Of a stretch of 64,000 nucleotides of DNA, positions 42,801 through 52,110 are shown one piece after another. The stretch is from Orbicella franksi (lineage: Eukaryota). The DNA lies in contig OZ116711.1 in the NCBI GenBank assembly GCA_964199315.1, positions 19,778,001 through 19,842,000 of the forward strand. The letters run 5' to 3'. A program made the translations under genes and the position numbers. Positions within the stretch are counted from its first letter, which is position 1. Each line of letters opens with the position of its first letter. The notes under the pieces are model-generated. The model had not been told where the DNA came from. It ran no database searches and saw only the letters and a program-made list of their open reading frames with translations.

Positions 42801-45800
42801 TTGGTTGGTTGATAACTCGATTCTTCCATGACTAAACTCTCTTTAGGCAGGGAACAAATGCCACTATAAAACCTACTATTTATTTTTGAAGTGCAGTAGC
42901 TTGTGAGAAGTTGTAATGGTAGTCCAAGGTCTTAATATTAAGGGGATACTCGAAGCGTTGAAATTGTGCGGCTTATCAGGTCAGATAATTACCCTAACAT
43001 GTGTAGAAATGACCACATCTCACATAGGTACTTTGCACGCGTTGCGTATCTATGATTACTAATAAGTCCATTGTTTCCCTGCGTGCAGCAGGGACCCCAG
43101 CCCTGAAGCCCGGCAGTACTTAAAAGAGTGGATGAACAAGAAACGTTCAGAAAGGCAAGCAGAATGGAGAGGCCAACAGGAAGAAATGCGAGCACAGGAA
43201 CACCAACCCTTCATGTCTCCCACACAGGTAGTTACGAACCTCCTCTGTTATTTAACAAATAATTAAAGGTTGTCTTTCAAAATCGCAGGAGATTTCTCTT
43301 GTGATATACCGAAAAACCGACTCGGCTAAAAACAGTCAAAGTACAGAAGAAATGTAAGGGAGAATTATGAATCGTCATTTATTTTAACTACCTCTGCTAA
43401 GGTATGTAAGATTTAACCCTGACAAAATATGGACCTAAACAGTTTCTAACCTCATAAACTGTACGAAGAGTTTTTAAGTGAAAAATTGTAAAGTCCTTCT
43501 TAGCTTTTAAAAGAGTTTAACCCGTGTGTTAGGGCGTTAGGTTATTAGGGTATTAGGTTAATAGGCCATTAGGGTATTAGGGTATTGGGGTATTCATGTA
43601 TTGGGATATAAAAGTATAAAAAAAATTCCCGAATACCCCAATAACCCAAACACCCCAAACCCTAATAACCCTATTCCCTAATACCCTAATAACCCAACAC
43701 CCCGGGGCCGGGTTTTTCGAAAGCCAGTTAACGCTAACCCAGGTTTAAAAGTTAACCGAAATATTAATTTCTCTTGTATAAAAATGTTTTTTACTACTTA
43801 GGCTTTGTGTAGTTTGAGCTTAATCAAGCTTAAAACTGAAAGACAAATATTATAAACAGAAAACCTCACCGATAAGTTACATAACTGAAATCAAAATTCT
43901 TGGTAATCCTTGGTAATCCTTAGTTCTTGGGCCCCTTCTATTTCTATTATGTATAAATAATCTTCCTAATTGCGTCCAGCATTCTCAACCAAGGATGTAC
44001 GCCGATGATACTAGTGTTACGTTTGCTGGTAGTGATGTTGATGAAATGAATAATTGTATTAATCTTGATTTGGAGAGAATTCGTGTGTGACTTGCAGCCA
44101 ACAAACTAACTTTAAATATGATAAAGTGAGAATTCCTACTGATTGGTTCTAAGCAAAGGTTGTAGTGGTGGGAAGGGTTGGGGAGGAAATCAAGCAAATT
44201 TGTCGCTTCATTAGTTGTGTGCTTCGAGTATGCCCATTTCTAGACTTCACTTCGTTTCTTTCTAACTACCGCTTATTTCCAGGGCTCCACAAATTTTAAA
44301 AAGATGAAGCTTATGGAAAAAGAGAGAAGCGTCAAACGCAGGTATGGGGTTAAATGACTATTTTGTGTAACGTACCTTTTGTGGCACAATCACGCAGAGG
44401 TCACGCTATAGATGTAACGCAATTAGACTTTATTGTGTTTCGTTACCCTTATATTTGTGATCAGCGGACTCCCTCTGATATCCGATTTTTTTTATTGTTG
44501 AATTACCAAGGAAAACAGAAGACCAGCATAAGCAGAAAAGGCTCGAGTCCGCGTCCAATCTCCTCTCCGAGATGCTGGCCGAGCCGGTTCCCAAGCCCAC
44601 CGAGCCCAAACCAAATCTTCGTTACGGAGAGAACGTAAACTCGCGTTACTCAACATCGCTTACAGGAAAAAAGAAAAGAACCAATGAACGAAATAAAAAG
44701 TTACCTAAGGCTCCGCTTAAAGGCAAACGGGACCGGCAAGTAGAAAAATCTGCTCACACAAAAGAAAATGCTTTACCCGAGAAACGGGATCGTGTTGATT
44801 TGCTATTTTCCGATGATATCGCGAGACACGGACGTGAAAATATAGGATTTAGATCTCAAAATACTCCTCGGCACGAAATTATAAGAACCAGCAGTCCAGT
44901 CTCTACAACTGAGTATGCTTCAGGGAGACTACAAGGGAAAAATGTCGATGAAGACAAGGGTGAATTTATTAAAGAAAAACAGTTACCCGACGACGACTTT
45001 TGGCGCTCGAAGTCTCCGACCGGTGCCGAGTTTGTAACGACACAGACATATCGGAAGTTCACGAAGGAGCAACCTAAACGATTTAGAGCTAGAGAGGCTG
45101 CCATGAGGAAAACTCCGCCCATGGCTCTAGGTGCGTATGGTTTATCCCGGCAACCCCAAGGCGCATCCGCTATGGGGAGAACTTTCCAAAGGACACGGCC
45201 TACTGACTCTTTCCTCCCGGGAGGGGAGAGTTTAACGGAAATAGATCGCCTGCTGGAGGATATTCCTGACGATGGTTCTACCTTTGATCAAGCAAACCTT
45301 GAAGGAATAGAAAGCTTGTTAGAAGGAGATGATGAACTAAGAGATTTGTTATCAGATGTGGACTGGCGCGCCATCAGTAAGGTAAGAGATTGTGTTATCA
45401 TTGTGTCACGCCTCTTGTCACGCGTGGTAGCAACAAATAGGGGAGGTCACGCAGGTTACATCTCGTATCATGGCACACGTCTAACTATGTCATTGACACA
45501 CTCGTATTGCACCTTATGTAACGTCTCTTGTCACGACTAGTGTCGCGTCTCATGTCACATCTTGTCACGTGTCTCGTTATGAAGTCACATTGCTTGTCAT
45601 GCTTGATGCCACGAATCTTGTCACGTGTCATTCCATATTTCATTTCTGTCACGTCAGATGGTATACTCTGTTTAATTTTGTCATTTTGTCATTTTGTTTG
45701 TCACTCCCCTGTCACGTCGAGTTTCACCAAGCTAAATACTAAATTTTGTGGCCTTTTCCGTTCCTGTTAAAAGAAGTGTTAAATCTTCCTTCACCGTAGT

Positions 45801-47369
45801 GGTCAAGTAATATTAGTCAATCATTGCTATGGTAAACACATAAGAGTTCTACAATCCTAAACAAGAGTCTTGGGAGAAATTTGCACTTTTGGTGCTTTTG
45901 GGCACACGCCAGATGCGAATACAACTTCACCTGCCTAACCTCGCCCCCCACCCCCCATACAATGTTGAAAACTACTACCTGCAATTTTTCCTGATTTTCA
46001 ACATTGTGTTGGGTGGGGAGGGGGAAGAGCAACGCGTTTTTAAAAGGATAGCAGCGCTCTTTTCAAACTTCAGTTGTAAACACAGATAATTCGTTACATT
46101 ACGTAAGTGTCCCAAGGACTTTTGTCCACGATCGTAGCTTGTTTACGTTATGCAAACATTTCCTGTTGAATAACAACGTGGTCGCTGGGTGAACACCCAA
46201 TTCTTAACGTCAGAGTAAGGGTGTTATTCTTTTAGCCTCAAAGGGACAGTTCTGCCAGACCAACCAGAGAACGATCCAGTCCGTTTAACGCAAGACGAAA
46301 AGGTAAATATTTCATTCTTGTGAATAGCAGAGTAGTCCACAAAGTCCCCCAATTTGGAATTTAGTTTTGCAACACGGTTAGTAATTAGACGCTCGTGAAT
46401 CCAAATCTGTAAGGATGTCCGTATCTACGATTTCTATTTGCGTGATGATTCCGAACTCTTAACGAACGTGTCCCAAAGATGGTATTGGTCCCAGACTTCG
46501 TGGTTTCTTGCCGTATAGGAATCATTCAAAATGGTGGTGTTTACTAAAAATGTCGAGTCGCGTATATTTCCCGTGTATTTTACGATCATTCCTCTCCTTA
46601 ACCGTAATGGTCATACCTCGTTTGACCAGCTTTTTATCAATGTGCCTTATGTATTTCTGATTTTTCAGATGATTGGCAACCAAGAGGTAGTCAGGACCAT
46701 AGGCATCGCCATCCTGAACCTGCGGTGCCTTCTAGCAACAGTCTGTTGCCGGAGTTTAATGATGAGGTCAGCCCGTGGAATACAAGACAGAGCATGCGCA
46801 CGTCTGACGATGTTGCACAGCTCTTGGTGAGTGATAGAATAGTTGTTGTATCGATGCACAGTCGGGCAGTCTAGTCTGTTCTCAAGGATTAAGAAGTTTT
46901 GTGCTAGTTTTGTTTTCCTTTTTCGGACAAGAAACTTCTTTACATTGCTTCTCTGCGGCCAGGTCTATGCATAAATACTGGCAAATTAAATGCCGGGAGA
47001 AGGGAGGACCTTGCGACGGACTAGCATTCCATCAAGAGGTGGGAGAATTACTCGTACTCGCGGTTTCATCCTATTGAAACCGGAGATAAGCACTGGCCGG
47101 ATGGGTCACTATGCTAAAAGTTAAACTTTACCTTAATTATTCACTTGTGTGACGATACTTTTACGAGAATTCTCACATAGCTAGTCACGCAATCTTTCGA
47201 TAGGATTACATAACGGAATAGGATGGTGTTTTCTTATAAGATAAGGTGTTTTCCTGTTGCGTTACAGGCTGAAGTTGACGAGGCTGTAGGAAACATGTCG
47301 GAGAGTACTGGCAGTACCAGAAGTCAAATTGATTGGGAAGAAGTCGACAAAATCATGGGCGAGACGTAG
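18812..47369 (+). CDS. CPLANE1: Ciliogenesis and planar polarity effector 1 (C5orf42/JBTS17) orthologue, about 3636 aa, 30 coding exons, complete
   Basis: Exons 18812-18892, 20075-20210, 20374-20490, 21165-21287, 21403-21515, 22325-22460, 23630-23900, 25055-25237, 25558-25761, 26255-26430, 27375-28361, 29572-30851, 31324-31606, 32013-32197, 33329-34949, 35663-35836, 36468-36732, 37305-38330, 38956-40211, 40769-40901, 41326-41482, 41573-41756, 41837-42164, 42700-42795, 43089-43227, 44283-44341, 44511-45381, 46236-46302, 46669-46826, 47268-47369 (10911 nt, phases all consistent). Recognised motifs: N-terminal MLLKLDVLASTTIKRKKPWPTFAWLGK, SGKTKKKIPLLQ, SWWISDMAWTRDSL, QRFSVAVHPHLPVILSSDGYLVT, RLIPLEKILAF, LKEWMNKKRSER and C-terminal SESTGSTRSQIDWEEV. 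Confidence 0.93.
23066..23487. mobile_element. MITE ggatcatgtttactaaaggcatcc...ggatgcctttaatgcacatgatcc; partial relative at about 17230-17385
   Basis: Inverted termini and internal tcgatc/gtcgac-rich repeats. Confidence 0.7.
25950..26720. repeat. Two copies of the ttttggttttgg / gattgg repeat family flanking CPLANE1 exon 10; related tract at about 60350-60590
   Basis: tttggttttggtttt...cgacactca...aaaaccgct occurs at about 25975-26095 and about 26665-26715. Confidence 0.55.
29165..29460. repeat. Dispersed repeat (gttgaaaatacgacgc...tttgatatatc..ctcaatcgaaactaaaac); copies at about 35855-36050, about 40590-40745 and inverted at about 56060-56185
   Basis: Four recognisably homologous copies. 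Confidence 0.7.
32220..32545 (+). repeat. Tandem repeat of about 105 bp, array 2 (CPLANE1 intron 14)
   Basis: gctatt at 32286 and 32391, giving a period of 105. Confidence 0.8.
40960..41300 (-). repeat. Tandem repeat of about 106 bp, array 3, inverted orientation (CPLANE1 intron 20)
   Basis: actgctcaat at 41101 and 41207, giving a period of 106. Reverse complement of arrays 1 and 2. Confidence 0.8.
43524..43703. repeat. Inverted pair of telomere-like arrays (TATTAGGG)n ... (CCCTAATA)n
   Basis: G-rich arm at 43524-43605, A-rich spacer, C-rich arm at 43626-43703. Confidence 0.7.
43923..44160 (+). mobile_element. CR1/L2-type LINE reverse transcriptase fragment (pseudogenised)
   Basis: VLGPLLFLLCINNLPNCVQHSQPRMYADDTSVTFAG...LAANKLTLN...EFLLIGSKQR, containing the YADD catalytic motif and in-frame stops. 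Confidence 0.85.
45400..45720. repeat. (tgtcacg)-rich degenerate repeat; inverted relative at about 57970-58090
   Basis: Many ttgtcacg(t/c) units right after CPLANE1 exon 27. Confidence 0.55.
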
Positions 47370-48905: not shown

Positions 48906-50133
48906 TCACTTAGCAGGAAATCGGACACAAATACATGCCACAGGGACCTCAAGTGTCTTGGATACATCCCGATCGCCATCTCGGACAATTAAGTAAAAAT
49001 TGCGAATCAGCTTCTGGCACAAGCCCCGACCACCAAAACAGGTACTTTGAGCAGAACAATCGAAGTCACGTGCCTGCAATGTCGCAACCCCTGCGATGGG
49101 ATAGTCACTTATTGTTGCCCGGCAGCCTCCGCATGGATTGGCTCCGCCAAGTTCAATCCGACCGCATCGTTTGGAGGCATTGGAAGAGGACGAAACGTTT
49201 CTCTTAGCTTTCCGTGACTGGGAGGAATTTAACCCGCGTATTACGCTGAAAAGAAAGAGAGGTTGCTTTTAAAATGTGTTCGTGAAGCTCACCTTTGCTA
49301 CCAAAACAACGCTGACGTTTCCTGTGTTAGGTCCGGGGGGGGGGGCTTCCATGTGAAAAGGTCGGGAATGCTCGCTGGAAAATTTGAATTCAACCACTTA
49401 AGGCGACCAGTCTGGGCGTGATTCGAGGTTTGACTCCTAAAAGATTCCTCCATGAAACGGACAGACAGCGGTATTTCTCTTTTATATAAAAAATACCTTG
49501 ACCGCGAAGAATAGTGGCTAAGTGAGACCAAAATTCGTGATTTACACGGTCCGTAAGCGAGTCGACAAGCATCCCCGACCTTTTCACATGGAGGTTCCGT
49601 TACATACATACATACGTACTTTATTGGAACTCCCTTTAACAGGGCTTTTCAGTCACAATAAACTAACTATTAAAAAATACTAGAAATTAAAAAACTTATT
49701 TACAATAAGTAAGTATCTGCACTCCGCTGAACTGCATTGTGCATGCAAGTGAATATCTGAAAGATCAAATATTTTGTTGCGCACGATTCTCGCGTCATTA
49801 ACGCGCGCGCGTATCAAAGTTTTAAGGGGAAACAGACTTTGTGTACTATCATTCTTACCTTACATTCGGCAGGTCGAGAATTCCAATTTCTTTAAGCTGT
49901 AAAACAACGTCTTCAAAGGAAGGTGAATTACTGCTATTTAATGCCACGTAGTTTCTAGACGCTCCCGGAAGATAATGTGTGTGAGTTTCTGCGTCACGTA
50001 ACTGAAGGGTTCTTTCGAGCTTCTTAAGATTGCGTGACTTCCATTTATGCCGCGTCTTGCGTGACCGGTGAGGTCTATTCCCGGTAGTTAAAGCGTATAG
50101 TATGATTAAGAAGTAAATAGTTGTTATCCGCAT
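48906..50133 (-). CDS. Secreted cystine-knot prepro-protein (neurotrophin/Spaetzle/IL-17-like cysteine pattern), 204 aa
   Basis: Exon 1 is 50133-49859 (donor AG|GTAAGA) and exon 2 is 49245-48906 (acceptor ctctctttcttttcag), joined in phase 2. The product has a hydrophobic signal peptide MRITTIYFLIILYALTTG, a basic prodomain, a furin-type RKAKR, and then a 97-aa region with 8 Cys ending in EVPVACICVRFPAK*. An acceptor just before the ATG (atctttgcag) and a donor near 51209 suggest a 5' UTR exon. Confidence 0.8.
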
Positions 50134-52110
50134 GGCTTTCAAGCTGCAAAGATAGTCAAATATAAAAGTAACTGGAAATAACTGGTAGCTAAGGGTTGAA
50201 TAAGGTAAAGTTTCGTACAAGTCTCGCCCATGTTTCCCATAACATAGAGCGAGAGCACGTATTTGCTACCCCCTCTCCCCCCTCGGGTGAAGACGGGTGA
50301 TTGACGATGTTTACACAGGGTAACCTGTATTGAACAGACATCCCCGAGACCCTCTCTTTTATCCGCTCTATTATAGAAGTGTCCCCTTAATACGGCTTCG
50401 TTTTATAGGAAATAAAGGAACGAAAACGTTTGGGACCTACTAAAAGTAGTGACCGCTTATATACAGGGTGTCCACTAAATACGGTTTCTGCTTAATACAG
50501 GTTTCCACTCTATTATATTTATTGTCGATATGAGATGTTGATTTACACAATTGAAAATATCATCCGCTTAACACGCTAAATCTTTTAAGCTAATGGACAT
50601 TACTTAACAGACTGTCTGAACAGCATTCGCGGCGTTAGTCAATACAGTGATAAAAACTGCGTGAACGGGAAAGAGTGTTAAATGTTTCGACTTTAAAATG
50701 GGCTATACTTGAACTTCAGAAGGTTTTAAACTTGTGTTTTTCTAATAGTTTTGTATTGTTTTGTAAACGTTTATGTTGTGTGACGTGTCTAAGGAACGAA
50801 TCGGTTGACTTTTTGACTCAAAATCTCGTAAGCTCGTGGGTTAAGAAAGTATTCCTTAGGGACGTGATGTTAACTTTTGAAAACCAACTTGCATTGAAAA
50901 TATCTTGCCGTAAGCCACGCGAATGCAAGGAACCGTGTCAATCGATAAAATTCTGTTATCCTTTCATTGAGTTATCGGCTTTCCAAGCTTGTGTCAAATT
51001 TTAAAGACGGCCCAATTGTTGTGTGTTTTTGCTGTTGTAGTAAAAGATTTGGCGTACAGCCACTCACGGTGCATATAAAATGAAATATAAAGGATAATTT
51101 TTTTCGGTCTCTTGCCTTCTTTCTCTATATCACAGCACGACACAATTGATATCTTTACCCAGGTCTCAAAATAGTGTAAACGGCAAAGTAAAGTCAACAA
51201 AACAATTACCTTAGAACAGTCTCTTGCTCTTTGTTATCGCGAAAAACTGTCACATTCCCTTGAGCATTTCTCTGCTAATTTGTAGTTTAAAAAACTCTTG
51301 ACAATTATTCATCAATCAAAAGCCCAAGAAGGAATTCCACCCGTTAGTTGGCTGGTAACGTTTGGAAAAATAAAAACAACAAGCTAACTCTTTCATTTTC
51401 AGTTGAAATACTGAGGTACTTGTTATGAAAGAAATATACAAAACAGTTGTTAACGATGATTGATAGAAACTTGTGTGGGTAACTGTCGGGTAACTGCCAG
51501 ATTCGTTGGGGTGATTACAGAAAAAGGAGCGCGCCAGGGAGAGACTGGTGCCAGAGGGAGTGAGTTCCTCCGCCCTAGTCCTTTGCGGCATCGCGCGCCA
51601 TTTCTAGTCGCTTTTCAAAATGGCTTGCGTTCTGTCGAGAGCATTAAGGTATACCTGCCAACCCGCTTTCGTTATGCGTGTGCCAGCAGGTCTAAAACGT
51701 CGCTTGACCAGTCTCTTGTGGACAAGCCTGACTCACAAAATTGAGCTAGTAAAACCCAAATGAACCATCGACTCACTCTGGGAAAGTGTAATATACTTAA
51801 CCAGCACATGATAGCCATTTTGTGAGTATGGAAGAGCTTAGTTAACAAGGACCTGAACCAGATTACACACTTACTTATTTCATTCCACGTTTAGTTTTTG
51901 TATTGCAGATAAAGGAAAAAACAATTTTTTTGCAGACACAGGGAATCGAACCAGGGAAACCCCCACTCAACGATCTACAACTTCATACCCTGATTTCCTT
52001 AAATCTATTTAATTCCCAAATCTGTTCTGTGTTTAATAATTGGTGCAATAAAATTGTTTTCTTCTACATACACGTTTAATTTTTTCTTCTTTTTTTTTTT
52101 TTTCAATTTA

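What the first reader, a model, noticed from the sequence alone, without database searches (positions are those of the whole stretch)
48906..50133. Hidden two-exon gene for a furin-processed, neurotrophin/Spaetzle-like cystine-knot ligand
Seen in sequence: the spliced product is MRITTIYFLIILYALTTG (signal peptide), a basic prodomain, RKAKR, then NVSSSSNASKRCGRIELGGANPCGGCRATISDYPIAGVATLQARDFDCSAQSTCFGGRGLCQKLIRNFYLIVRDGDRDVSKTLEVPVACICVRFPAK*. Six of the eight Cys are spaced C-x35-C-x5-C-x6-C-x27-C-x-C; the other two form an extra CxxC (PCGGC). The second exon is not in the ORF track. Established knowledge: mature NGF has C-x42-C-x9-C-x11-C-x27-C-x-C, follows an RxKR site and ends in ACVCV. 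Drosophila Spaetzle C106 has a similar layout with a terminal IPSCCKC. IL-17 ends in VxVGCTCV. TGF-beta and glycoprotein-hormone knots have CxGxC, which is absent here. Inference: this is a secreted growth factor or cytokine of the NGF/Spz/IL-17 structural group. Canonical neurotrophin and Spaetzle ligands are usually treated as bilaterian, so a copy in a probable cnidarian could be a missing ligand for Trk-like, p75/TNFR, Toll or IL-17R-type receptors.
Basis: partly seen in the sequence, partly recalled or inferred. Interest (0 to 1): 0.88.

Follow-up and report, generated by a model that had tools for sequence, protein, structure and literature searches.

The report
Unannotated coral cystine-knot cytokine-like gene
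A real, conserved but apparently unannotated stony-coral gene encodes a secreted precursor whose tail is predicted to fold like the interleukin-17 / nerve-growth-factor group of signalling proteins; such proteins are already known from corals, so it adds a new family, not a new principle.

Summary
On the minus strand, ATG 50133 to donor AG|GTAAGA at 49859, a 613-nt intron and acceptor ttttcag| at 49245 give a 204-aa reading frame ending at 48906. Nine other coral-type contigs keep the same phase-2 intron and open frame, and four of them share the neighbouring gene. dN/dS is 0.26-0.51 and below 1 in at least 99.4% of bootstraps. All eight Cys are invariant.

Two AlphaFold models (pLDDT 79 and 80) show four long strands. 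In unbiased scans of 48,161 PDB chains, 32 of 39 and 37 of 40 hits at Z>=2 are cystine-knot growth factors. IL-17A, Spaetzle, IL-25, NGF, Gremlin and PTTH lead, with best Z 4.7-5.8. Foldseek and protein-language-model features put IL-17 first.

No sequence method links it to IL17, NGF, Spaetzle or Noggin, and HMMER against 1.84 billion proteins found only unnamed coral ORF fragments.

- The dibasic site conserved across the family is KR directly before Cys1; RKAKR occurs only in the window's clade.
- A conserved acceptor 10 nt before the ATG implies an upstream non-coding exon.
- IL-17 and Trunk ligands are already published for cnidarians, so the 'bilaterian-only' premise is outdated.

Verdict: a new, sequence-orphan member of a known superfamily. 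Its receptor and function are untested. The scan's unchecked notes report other cystine-knot prepro-ligand genes elsewhere in this genome.

The parts
50144..50160 (-). Pyrimidine tract plus AG (ctatctttgcag) ending 10 nt upstream of the ATG. It is a probable 3' splice site, which implies an upstream non-coding exon that was not located.
   Evidence: A polypyrimidine+AG sits exactly 10 nt before the start codon in all ten orthologues, including distant ones whose flanks are otherwise unalignable. For L011 this counts from an in-frame ATG five codons upstream of the one used to build its 194-aa model.
49859..50143 (-). First coding exon: 10 nt of 5' UTR plus CDS 50133-49859 (91 codons + 2 nt). 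It ends at donor AG|GTAAGA.
   Evidence: Exon and donor are conserved in nine other contigs.
50080..50133 (-). Predicted signal peptide, residues 1-18: MR, a hydrophobic core, then small residues T-T-G at -3 to -1.
   Evidence: Read from the sequence. A hydrophobic N-terminus is kept in all orthologues. No SignalP run was possible, so this is inference.
49861..49920 (-). Near-invariant prodomain motif SFEDVVxQLKEIGILDLPxV (residues 72-91), the best-conserved stretch of the whole protein.
   Evidence: Full-length alignment of ten orthologues. It is the only part that still aligns at DNA level with the distant orthologue L012; the L011 match covers the whole first coding exon.
49246..49858 (-). 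Phase-2 intron, 613 nt, GT...AG.
   Evidence: The position and phase are the same in all orthologues, with intron lengths of 155-745 nt.
48906..49245 (-). Second coding exon, including the stop codon at 48906-48908.
   Evidence: ORF-called homologues P0001-P0009, P0011, P0012 and P0030 cover this exon.
49200..49214 (-). RKAKR basic site (residues 103-107), present only in the window's clade.
   Evidence: Alignments.
49167..49172 (-). KR dibasic site (residues 117-118) directly before Cys1. It is the only processing site conserved across the family.
   Evidence: KR|C, RKKR|C, RMKR|C and EKR|HC.
48909..49166 (-). Mature 86-residue domain with 8 invariant Cys, an invariant NPCGGC motif (SPCGGC in one of 13 sequences, P0030), CFxGxGxC and a terminal CxC. 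It is predicted to be a four-strand cystine-knot cytokine fold.
   Evidence: Alignments A2-A4. AF2 models have pLDDT 78.7 and 80.4.

Best explanation
The locus is a functional, single-copy gene of stony corals with two coding exons, probably preceded by a non-coding exon. It encodes a 204-aa prepro-protein made of a signal peptide, a roughly 100-residue basic, N-glycosylated prodomain carrying a near-invariant motif, a dibasic KR site, and an 86-residue C-terminal domain.

Inferred mechanism: the protein enters the secretory pathway and is cut by a furin or prohormone-convertase-type enzyme at KR|Cys1, and in this clade possibly also at RKAKR. This releases a compact cystine-knot domain.

In that domain, three disulfides would form the knot: one Cys of PCGGC to C76, C63 to C104, and C69 to C106 (exon-B numbering), closing a 10-membered ring. 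The fourth disulfide would tie the N-terminal Cys to the other PCGGC Cys.

Like its nearest structural neighbours (invertebrate-type IL-17, CFSH, Trunk/PTTH, Spaetzle, NGF), it most likely acts as a dimeric extracellular ligand for a single-pass receptor. The candidates in corals are IL-17R-like (double FN3 + SEFIR), Torso-like RTK or TLR.

Shown here: the gene structure, its conservation, purifying selection and the predicted fold class. Inferred: secretion, cleavage, disulfide map, dimerisation and receptor. Within the superfamily, IL-17-like is the single best guess at about 40%.
For: Gene reality:
- Splice sites, phase and open frame are conserved in ten contigs.
- Four loci share the convergent neighbouring gene.
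- Omega is 0.26-0.51, and at most 0.6% of bootstraps reach 1.

Domain: all 8 Cys and the NPCGGC (SPCGGC in one sequence, P0030) and CFxGxGxC motifs are invariant over 13 sequences that fall to about 40% identity.

Fold:
- Two AF2 models have pLDDT 78.7 and 80.4, each with four long strands.
- An unbiased VIA scan of 48,161 PDB representatives gave only 39 and 40 chains with Z>=2. Of these, the top 32 and top 37 are cystine-knot growth factors.
- The leaders for the window model were Spaetzle 4.7, IL-17A 4.5, Gremlin 4.4, NGF 4.4, IL-25 4.3 and PTTH 4.1.
- The leaders for the distant orthologue were IL-17A 5.8, Gremlin 5.2 and IL-25 5.0.
- Foldseek against PDB for the distant orthologue returned IL-17A for all of the top 50 (E 0.04-0.27, prob 0.94-1.0).
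- Against Swiss-Prot models, IL-17A came first at E 0.065, prob 0.99.
- In the ESM Atlas, TM-scores were 0.52-0.61 to IL17, Spaetzle and NGF clusters.
- Language-model features put IL17 first, at 0.90-0.91 with 190-191 of 256 shared features.

Architecture parallel: CFSH is built as signal peptide, precursor peptide, KR, then an 8-Cys IL-17-domain hormone (PMC6056722). Invertebrate IL-17s keep all three knot disulfides (PMC4517768, PMC11087794).
Against: - No sequence-level link to any named family. Pfam gave nothing at E<=10 for 12 members. A PDB profile search gave only a spurious Bet v 1 hit. HMMER over 1.84 billion proteins returned only unnamed coral fragments plus two false positives.
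- All structural scores are modest: Z<6, Foldseek E>0.03, TM about 0.5. They do not separate IL-17 from Spaetzle, NGF, PTTH or DAN.
- The MSA behind the models is shallow (13 sequences).
- Disulfide connectivity could not be inspected.
- No spliced transcript or full-length predicted protein exists in the searched collections. Expression is therefore unproven.
- The prodomain is more conserved than the supposed active domain, which a simple ligand model does not explain.
Confidence: 0.72

Rival explanations
1. It is specifically a divergent Trunk/PTTH-type neurohormone that signals through the coral Torso-like receptor tyrosine kinase, and is not an IL-17-type cytokine.
For: The precursor layout is that of PTTH/Trunk: a long prodomain, a dibasic cut, and a knot at the extreme C-terminus. 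PTTH (5aoq_M) scores Z 4.1-4.3. Trunk models reach TM 0.49-0.55. A 'prothoracicotropic hormone-like' cluster ranks third by features. Trunk and torso exist in corals (PMC6660194) and Trunk is reported as the closest relative of IL-17 (PMC11087794).
Against: IL-17 outranks PTTH/Trunk in every search. The published coral trunk proteins are annotated NCBI entries. Our profile found no named protein among 1.84 billion, so this is not that orthologue.
Confidence: 0.15
2. It is a Spaetzle/neurotrophin-type ligand for a Toll-like or p75/Trk-like receptor.
For: Spaetzle is the top VIA hit for the window's own model (Z 5.0 for 4bv4_L, 4.7 for 3e07_A). NGF and NT-3 score Z 4.4-4.8. Prodomain plus basic cleavage is the Spaetzle/NGF pattern. 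The spacing between the fourth and fifth knot Cys, x27, equals that of NGF.
Against: There are no PF00243 or PF16077 hits. The ring has 10 members against 14 in NGF. For the distant orthologue, Spaetzle drops to Z 3.4 and NGF to 3.8-4.0 while IL-17A rises to 5.8. Features rank NGF/Spaetzle below IL17.
Confidence: 0.12
3. It is a secreted effector and not a signalling ligand. It could be a venom or nematocyst component, an antimicrobial peptide, or a BMP/Wnt antagonist of the DAN/Norrin type. Cnidarian toxins are commonly made as prepro-peptides cut at KR.
For: It is a prepro-peptide with KR directly before a Cys-rich domain. The mature domain evolves fast: about 40% identity between orthologues whose neighbouring gene is 52-58% identical. 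Omega is about 1 or higher between the closest pairs, though on small counts. Gremlin-1, NBL1 and Norrin score Z 4.0-5.2.
Against: The roughly 100-residue, highly conserved prodomain is unlike the short propeptides of nematocyst toxins (my own knowledge). There is no CxGxC 8-membered ring as in DAN/CTCK proteins. No toxin family matched. It is single-copy, not an expanded array, in this window.
Confidence: 0.08
4. The conserved ORF is real, but the cystine-knot fold is a prediction artefact of a small Cys-rich beta-hairpin protein, and the protein belongs to an unrelated new fold.
For: The MSA is shallow, pLDDT is below 90, all Z are below 6, the tool itself warns that Z<8 can reflect a common arrangement, and disulfide geometry was not inspected.
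Against: Two models from sequences only 42% identical give the same topology. In the unbiased scans, every one of the top 32 and top 37 PDB hits belongs to one superfamily, which is not what an arbitrary hairpin protein would give. A structure-independent language-model search names the same clan for ten of the ten best named hits.
Confidence: 0.06

Closest known systems
Invertebrate-type IL-17 (type T1A of Chen et al. 2024, PMC11087794), including crustacean female sex hormone (CFSH)
   Same: The fold is a four-strand cystine knot with all three knot disulfides possible, a terminal C-x-C, and a short gap between the second and third knot Cys (x5 here; x4 in IL-17F, from my own knowledge). It is the best structural and feature-based neighbour. 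CFSH shares the layout of signal peptide, precursor peptide, KR and an 8-Cys mature hormone (PMC6056722). IL-17 ligands, receptors and the CIKS adaptor are present in cnidarians (PMC11087794, PMC8353272).
   Different: There is no PF06083 match at E<=10. It carries an extra N-terminal Cys pair in an invariant NPCGGC motif and a long, strongly conserved prodomain. It is known only from stony-coral-type contigs. Receptor binding is untested.
Trunk / PTTH (Torso ligands)
   Same: Both are prohormones with a C-terminal knot released at basic sites. The fold match is Z 4.1-4.3 to PTTH and TM 0.49-0.55 to Trunk models. Trunk and torso are reported in corals (PMC6660194).
   Different: It was not retrieved as a relative of any annotated coral protein. 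It ranks lower than IL-17. PTTH has 7 Cys with an inter-chain bond (my own knowledge), whereas this protein has 8.
Spaetzle and NGF-family neurotrophins
   Same: The fold matches at Z 4.4-5.0 for the window model. The prodomain is removed at a basic site. The spacing between the fourth and fifth knot Cys is x27, and the protein ends in C-x-C.
   Different: There are no PF16077 or PF00243 hits. The ring has 10 members against 14 in NGF. Scores are weaker for the distant orthologue. The conserved neurotrophin sequence boxes are absent.

Membership tests
Cystine-knot growth factor / cytokine superfamily (fold level) | Two long beta-hairpins (four strands) joined at one end by the Cys cluster | tested here: met
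   AF2 models show strands at 13-24, 28-37, 48-63 and 66-82, and the equivalent in the orthologue. The top 32 of 39 and top 37 of 40 hits in unbiased PDB scans are members of this superfamily.
Cystine-knot growth factor / cytokine superfamily (fold level) | Six Cys forming I-IV, II-V and III-VI, with one disulfide threading the ring | not testable with these tools
   Six invariant Cys sit where expected on the strands: C41 or C38, C63, C69, C76, C104 and C106. Model coordinates are not exposed, so the connectivity is inferred only.
IL-17 (PF06083) | Match to the family sequence profile | tested here: not met
   hmmscan against Pfam at E<=10 gave no IL17 hit for the window protein or for any of 12 members.
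IL-17 (PF06083) | Closest structural similarity to solved IL-17 chains | tested here: inconclusive
   IL-17A and IL-25 come top by Foldseek (E 0.04-0.3, prob up to 1.0) and by VIA for the orthologue (Z 5.8). The margins over Gremlin, Spaetzle and NGF are small and all E-values exceed 0.01.
IL-17 (PF06083) | Binds a double-FN3/SEFIR IL-17 receptor | not testable with these tools
   No complex prediction or assay is available here.
NGF / neurotrophin (PF00243) | Profile match and the NGF Cys framework (C-x9-C ring segment, 14-membered ring) | tested here: not met
   There is no PF00243 hit. The ring segment is C-x5-C. Only the x27 and C-x-C spacings coincide.
Spaetzle (PF16077) | Profile match | tested here: not met
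   There is no PF16077 hit. Fold similarity is Z 4.7-5.0 for one model but 3.4 for the other.
Trunk / PTTH | Sequence relationship to annotated trunk or PTTH proteins, including the published coral trunk entries | tested here: not met
   A profile HMMER search of 1.84 billion proteins returned no named or full-length protein. No dedicated trunk profile was available, so distant homology is not excluded.
TGF-beta / glycoprotein-hormone / DAN type knots | CxGxC in an 8-membered ring | tested here: not met
   No CxGxC is present. The ring segment is C-x5-C.

The most novel reading that the evidence does not exclude
The family is a stony-coral-specific, previously unrecognised branch of the IL-17/Trunk/neurotrophin clan. 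It would have its own Cys framework (NPCGGC plus a fourth disulfide and a 10-membered ring) and a functionally important prodomain, and it would serve as the endogenous ligand of one of the orphan coral receptors (IL-17R-like, Torso-like or TLR). That would give coral immunity or neuroendocrine signalling a testable ligand-receptor pair that annotation pipelines have missed.
Probability: 0.3. Interest if true: 0.65.

Novelty: new member of a known kind. Interest (0 to 1): 0.45.

Why it matters
Coral immune and neuroendocrine signalling is mostly inferred from receptors, while the ligands are poorly catalogued. Small, fast-evolving, multi-exon ligand genes escape both gene prediction and profile searches. 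This locus is a concrete example: it is conserved across stony corals and under purifying selection, yet it is absent from about 15 billion predicted proteins except as ORF fragments.

If it binds a coral IL-17R-like, Torso-like or Toll-like receptor, it would give an experimentally tractable ligand. It would also be a data point for the proposed common origin of IL-17 and Trunk-type ligands (PMC11087794). It does not change the picture of when this superfamily arose, because IL-17 and Trunk are already reported in cnidarians.

Tried and rejected
- **Pfam.** Scans of both exon products and of 12 family members at E<=10 gave no relevant family.
- **PDB sequence search.** A profile search against PDB sequences gave only a spurious Bet v 1 match at E 0.24.
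- **HMMER false positives.** Two large HMMER hits, P0010 and P0013, looked like multi-copy relatives. They are PKD/Big-repeat proteins of bacterial type that lack the cysteines, with hhalign probability 1.4%. Rejected.
- **Spliced-transcript search.** A degenerate 23-mer spanning the exon junction was scanned against metagenome contigs. It gave six hits, none with tblastn similarity beyond the 7-9 junction residues encoded by the pattern, and several with different GC content, so they are chance matches.
- **Prodomain search.** Searching with the prodomain exon to reach annotated full-length relatives returned only unnamed exon-1 ORF fragments.
- **Paralogues.** tblastn of ten orthologues found no paralogue in the window.
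- **Rfam.** A scan of the window found nothing.
- **Supplementary data.** The supplements of the IL-17 evolution papers were either not held or did not contain the NPCGGC motif. I could not check whether those authors already list this family.
- **Neighbouring ORF.** An Atlas look-up of the neighbouring ORF, meant to fix the taxon, was uninformative.
- **Subfamily assignment.** Structure scores could not discriminate between subfamilies.
Full report
**1. What is in the sequence**

On the minus strand, an ATG at 50133 opens a frame of 91 codons plus two bases. It ends at a consensus donor, AATGTAAG|GTAAGAAT, at 49859/49858. A pyrimidine-rich acceptor, tctctttcttttcag|C, at 49246/49245 restores the frame, which runs to TGA at 48908-48906.

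The mechanical ORF list shows only the first exon (as a 121-aa TTG ORF) and a 57-aa tail of the second.

**2. Is it a gene?**

Searching the second exon's translation found seven unnamed ORF-called proteins of 69-81% identity. Fetching their contigs showed exon A upstream of exon B in the same orientation in every contig long enough to hold it.

Six further contigs were first examined: L001, L002, L003, L005, L006 and L008. In all of them the ATG, the AG|GTAxG donor, the YYYYCAG acceptor, the phase-2 position and an uninterrupted 203-205-aa frame are kept.

A profile HMMER search of 1.84 billion representatives added more distant members: P0008, P0009, P0011 and P0012. A later profile search of the clustered collection added P0030. 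Their contigs (L011, L012/L013, L014) again carry exon A, the same intron phase and a 189-199-aa frame.

L001, L002, L011 and L012 also share the convergent roughly 300-aa ORF that lies at window 44572-45540. The distant copies are therefore orthologues, not paralogues.

One locus comes from a Tara coral metagenome scaffold. An ESM Atlas cluster that resembles the protein is cnidarian. The scan's own notes call this a stony-coral genome (unchecked).

Nei-Gojobori dN/dS for divergent pairs is 0.26-0.51. At most 0.6% of 2,000 codon bootstraps reach 1. Very close pairs give omega near or above 1, but on a handful of changes.

tblastn found no second copy in the window.

**3. Refinements of the anatomy**

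(a) All ten orthologues have a pyrimidine tract and AG exactly 10 nt before the start codon, although the distant ones share no other upstream similarity. For L011 the count runs from an in-frame ATG five codons upstream of the one used for its 194-aa model. The most economical reading is a conserved 3' splice site, hence an upstream non-coding exon that I could not locate.

The site present in every member is K/R-R immediately before the first Cys: SKR|C here, and RKKR|C, RMKR|C and EKR|HC in distant orthologues. The mature domain therefore most likely starts at Cys1 and is 86 residues long.

(c) Eight Cys are invariant, together with NPCGGC (SPCGGC in one of 13 sequences, P0030), CFxGxGxC and the terminal CxC. 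Cys1 lies 10 residues before PCGGC in the window's clade but only 3-4 residues before it in distant orthologues. The knot's first Cys is more plausibly one of the PCGGC pair, with Cys1 making the extra disulfide.

(d) The most conserved segment of the protein is in the prodomain, not the mature domain. SFEDVVxQLKEIGILDLPxV, at the end of exon A, is near-invariant, while the mature domain falls to about 40% identity. This stretch is also the only part that still aligns at DNA level with the distant orthologue L012; the L011 match covers the whole first coding exon.

**4. What fold?**

Sequence methods give nothing:
- Pfam had no hit at E<=10 for the two exon products or for any of 12 members.
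- A profile search against PDB sequences gave one spurious hit.
- The HMMER run gave two PKD-repeat false positives of bacterial type.

Structure prediction is informative. The mature domain of the window protein, with a 13-sequence MSA, has pLDDT 78.7. The 42%-identical orthologue P0011 has pLDDT 80.4. Both give four long strands in two hairpins.

VIA-align against 48,161 PDB representatives does not depend on Foldseek.

| Model | Chains with Z>=2 | Cystine-knot hits among them | Leading matches (Z) |
|---|---|---|---|
| Window protein | 39 | top 32 | Spaetzle 4.7, IL-17A 4.5, Gremlin-1 4.4, NGF 4.4, IL-25 4.3, Norrin 4.2, PTTH 4.1 |
| Orthologue P0011 | 40 | top 37 | IL-17A 5.8, Gremlin-1 5.2, IL-17A (second entry, 6wio) 5.1, IL-25 5.0 |

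Other searches agree:
- Foldseek against PDB: for the orthologue, all of the top 50 are IL-17A (E 0.04-0.27, prob 0.94-1.0). For the window protein, the top hits are IL-25 and IL-17A, followed by Spaetzle and NGF.
- Swiss-Prot models: IL-17A first (E 0.065, prob 0.99), with Trunk, Spaetzle-3 and NGF below.
- ESM Atlas shape search: TM 0.52-0.61 to IL17, Spaetzle and NGF clusters.
- A sequence-only language-model search names IL17 first (0.90-0.91, 190-191 of 256 shared features). PTTH-like, Spaetzle, NGF and Noggin follow. All ten best named hits fall in one clan.

Individually these scores are modest, and the tool's own notes warn about Z<8. The fact that one small superfamily supplies every leading match in unbiased searches, for two divergent sequences and by two independent kinds of method, makes the fold assignment solid (about 0.85-0.9).

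The subfamily is not resolved. IL-17 leads narrowly.

I could not inspect the model's Cys-Cys geometry. The I-IV, II-V, III-VI topology is inferred from the positions of the Cys on the strands.

**5. Mechanism**

Shown: a conserved, selected gene encoding a protein with a hydrophobic N-terminus, a basic N-glycosylated pro-region, a conserved dibasic site and a knot-type C-terminal domain.

Inferred:
- ER entry, with signal peptide cleavage after TTG18 by the -3/-1 rule.
- Convertase cleavage at KR|C.
- Release of an 86-residue knot with a 10-membered ring and a fourth N-terminal disulfide.
- Dimerisation and binding to a single-pass receptor.

The invariant prodomain motif suggests a folding, sorting or latency role, as in NGF or Spaetzle prodomains (established knowledge), or a second bioactive product. 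I cannot distinguish between these.

The best architectural parallel with a cited source is CFSH. It consists of a signal peptide, a precursor-related peptide, KR, and an 8-Cys hormone with an IL-17 domain (PMC6056722). It is reported to bind IL-17 receptors (PMC11087794, PMC10604874).

**6. Comparison with what is known, and novelty**

In 2008 no neurotrophin could be found in Nematostella (PMC2586362). Since then:
- IL-17 genes were reported in cnidarians: 11 in Pocillopora damicornis and 3 in Nematostella (PMC8353272).
- Invertebrate IL-17s were shown to retain the third knot disulfide (PMC4517768).
- Trunk was found in Stylophora and Orbicella, and torso in cnidarians (PMC6660194).
- A 2024 study traced IL-17/IL-17R/CIKS to cnidarians, Trunk 'from cnidarians to amphioxus', and cystine-knot neurotrophins to sponges (PMC11087794).

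A coral ligand of this structural group is therefore expected, not surprising.

What is new here is the particular family. It has no profile match, no named or full-length protein among about 15 billion, a distinctive Cys framework and prodomain, and so far it occurs only in stony-coral-type contigs. I could not check whether the curated dataset of PMC11087794 already contains it, because that supplement is not held.

Other unchecked first-reader notes report further cystine-knot prepro-ligand genes elsewhere in this genome. This is probably one of several such families.

I classify it as a new member of a known kind. My confidence is 0.72 in the overall explanation and about 0.4 in IL-17-like as the specific branch. 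Interest is 0.45.

Noticed in passing
window 44572-45540 (+) and 47268-47369 (+): A convergent neighbouring gene. It has a 322-aa ORF with no Pfam match that is conserved at 52-85% identity in L001, L002, L011 and L012. It also has a short terminal coding exon (acceptor ...cgttacag|GCT, 33 codons, stop TAG) that is 85-87% identical at DNA level even in distant corals, with changes at third codon positions. Its function is unknown. Atlas features point weakly to matrin-type or zinc-finger proteins (score 0.6-0.7).
   Followed up: partly
window 49861-49920 (-), and the equivalent in L011, L012 and L014: The prodomain motif SFEDVVxQLKEIGILDLPxV is more conserved than the presumed active cystine-knot domain, and prodomain omega is lower than mature-domain omega in most pairs. 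This is unexplained. It could be a chaperone or latency element, a sorting signal or a second peptide product.
   Followed up: partly
L003, L005 and L008 (closest orthologue trio): Pairwise omega is 0.67-2.55 overall among these three very similar copies and reaches 2.7 in the mature domain, in contrast with 0.26-0.5 for deeper pairs. The counts are small. It could be noise, or recent diversifying selection on the mature domain.
   Followed up: no
L001 9329-10555: A 408-aa reverse-transcriptase (RVT_1) ORF lies about 3 kb downstream of the orthologue in one related genome. tblastn with the flanking ORF of that locus places the window's match at 44494-45402, so the retroelement appears to be a lineage-specific insertion.
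   Followed up: no
P0010 (2010 aa) and P0013 (5178 aa): Giant PKD/Big-repeat proteins of bacterial type reached E 2.5e-13 and 2e-6 against the coral profile, through summed weak matches of a beta-strand motif over 4-5 repeats. They have no cysteines at the knot positions. This is a reminder that repeat proteins can inflate HMMER scores for short beta-rich profiles.
   Followed up: yes
same genome, other pieces (scan notes s1-204046, s1-207790, s1-207884, s1-196325): Unchecked first-reader notes describe further secreted cystine-knot prepro-protein genes, including a tandem array of nine. If they are real, this coral has several such ligand families. I could not read those windows.
   Followed up: no
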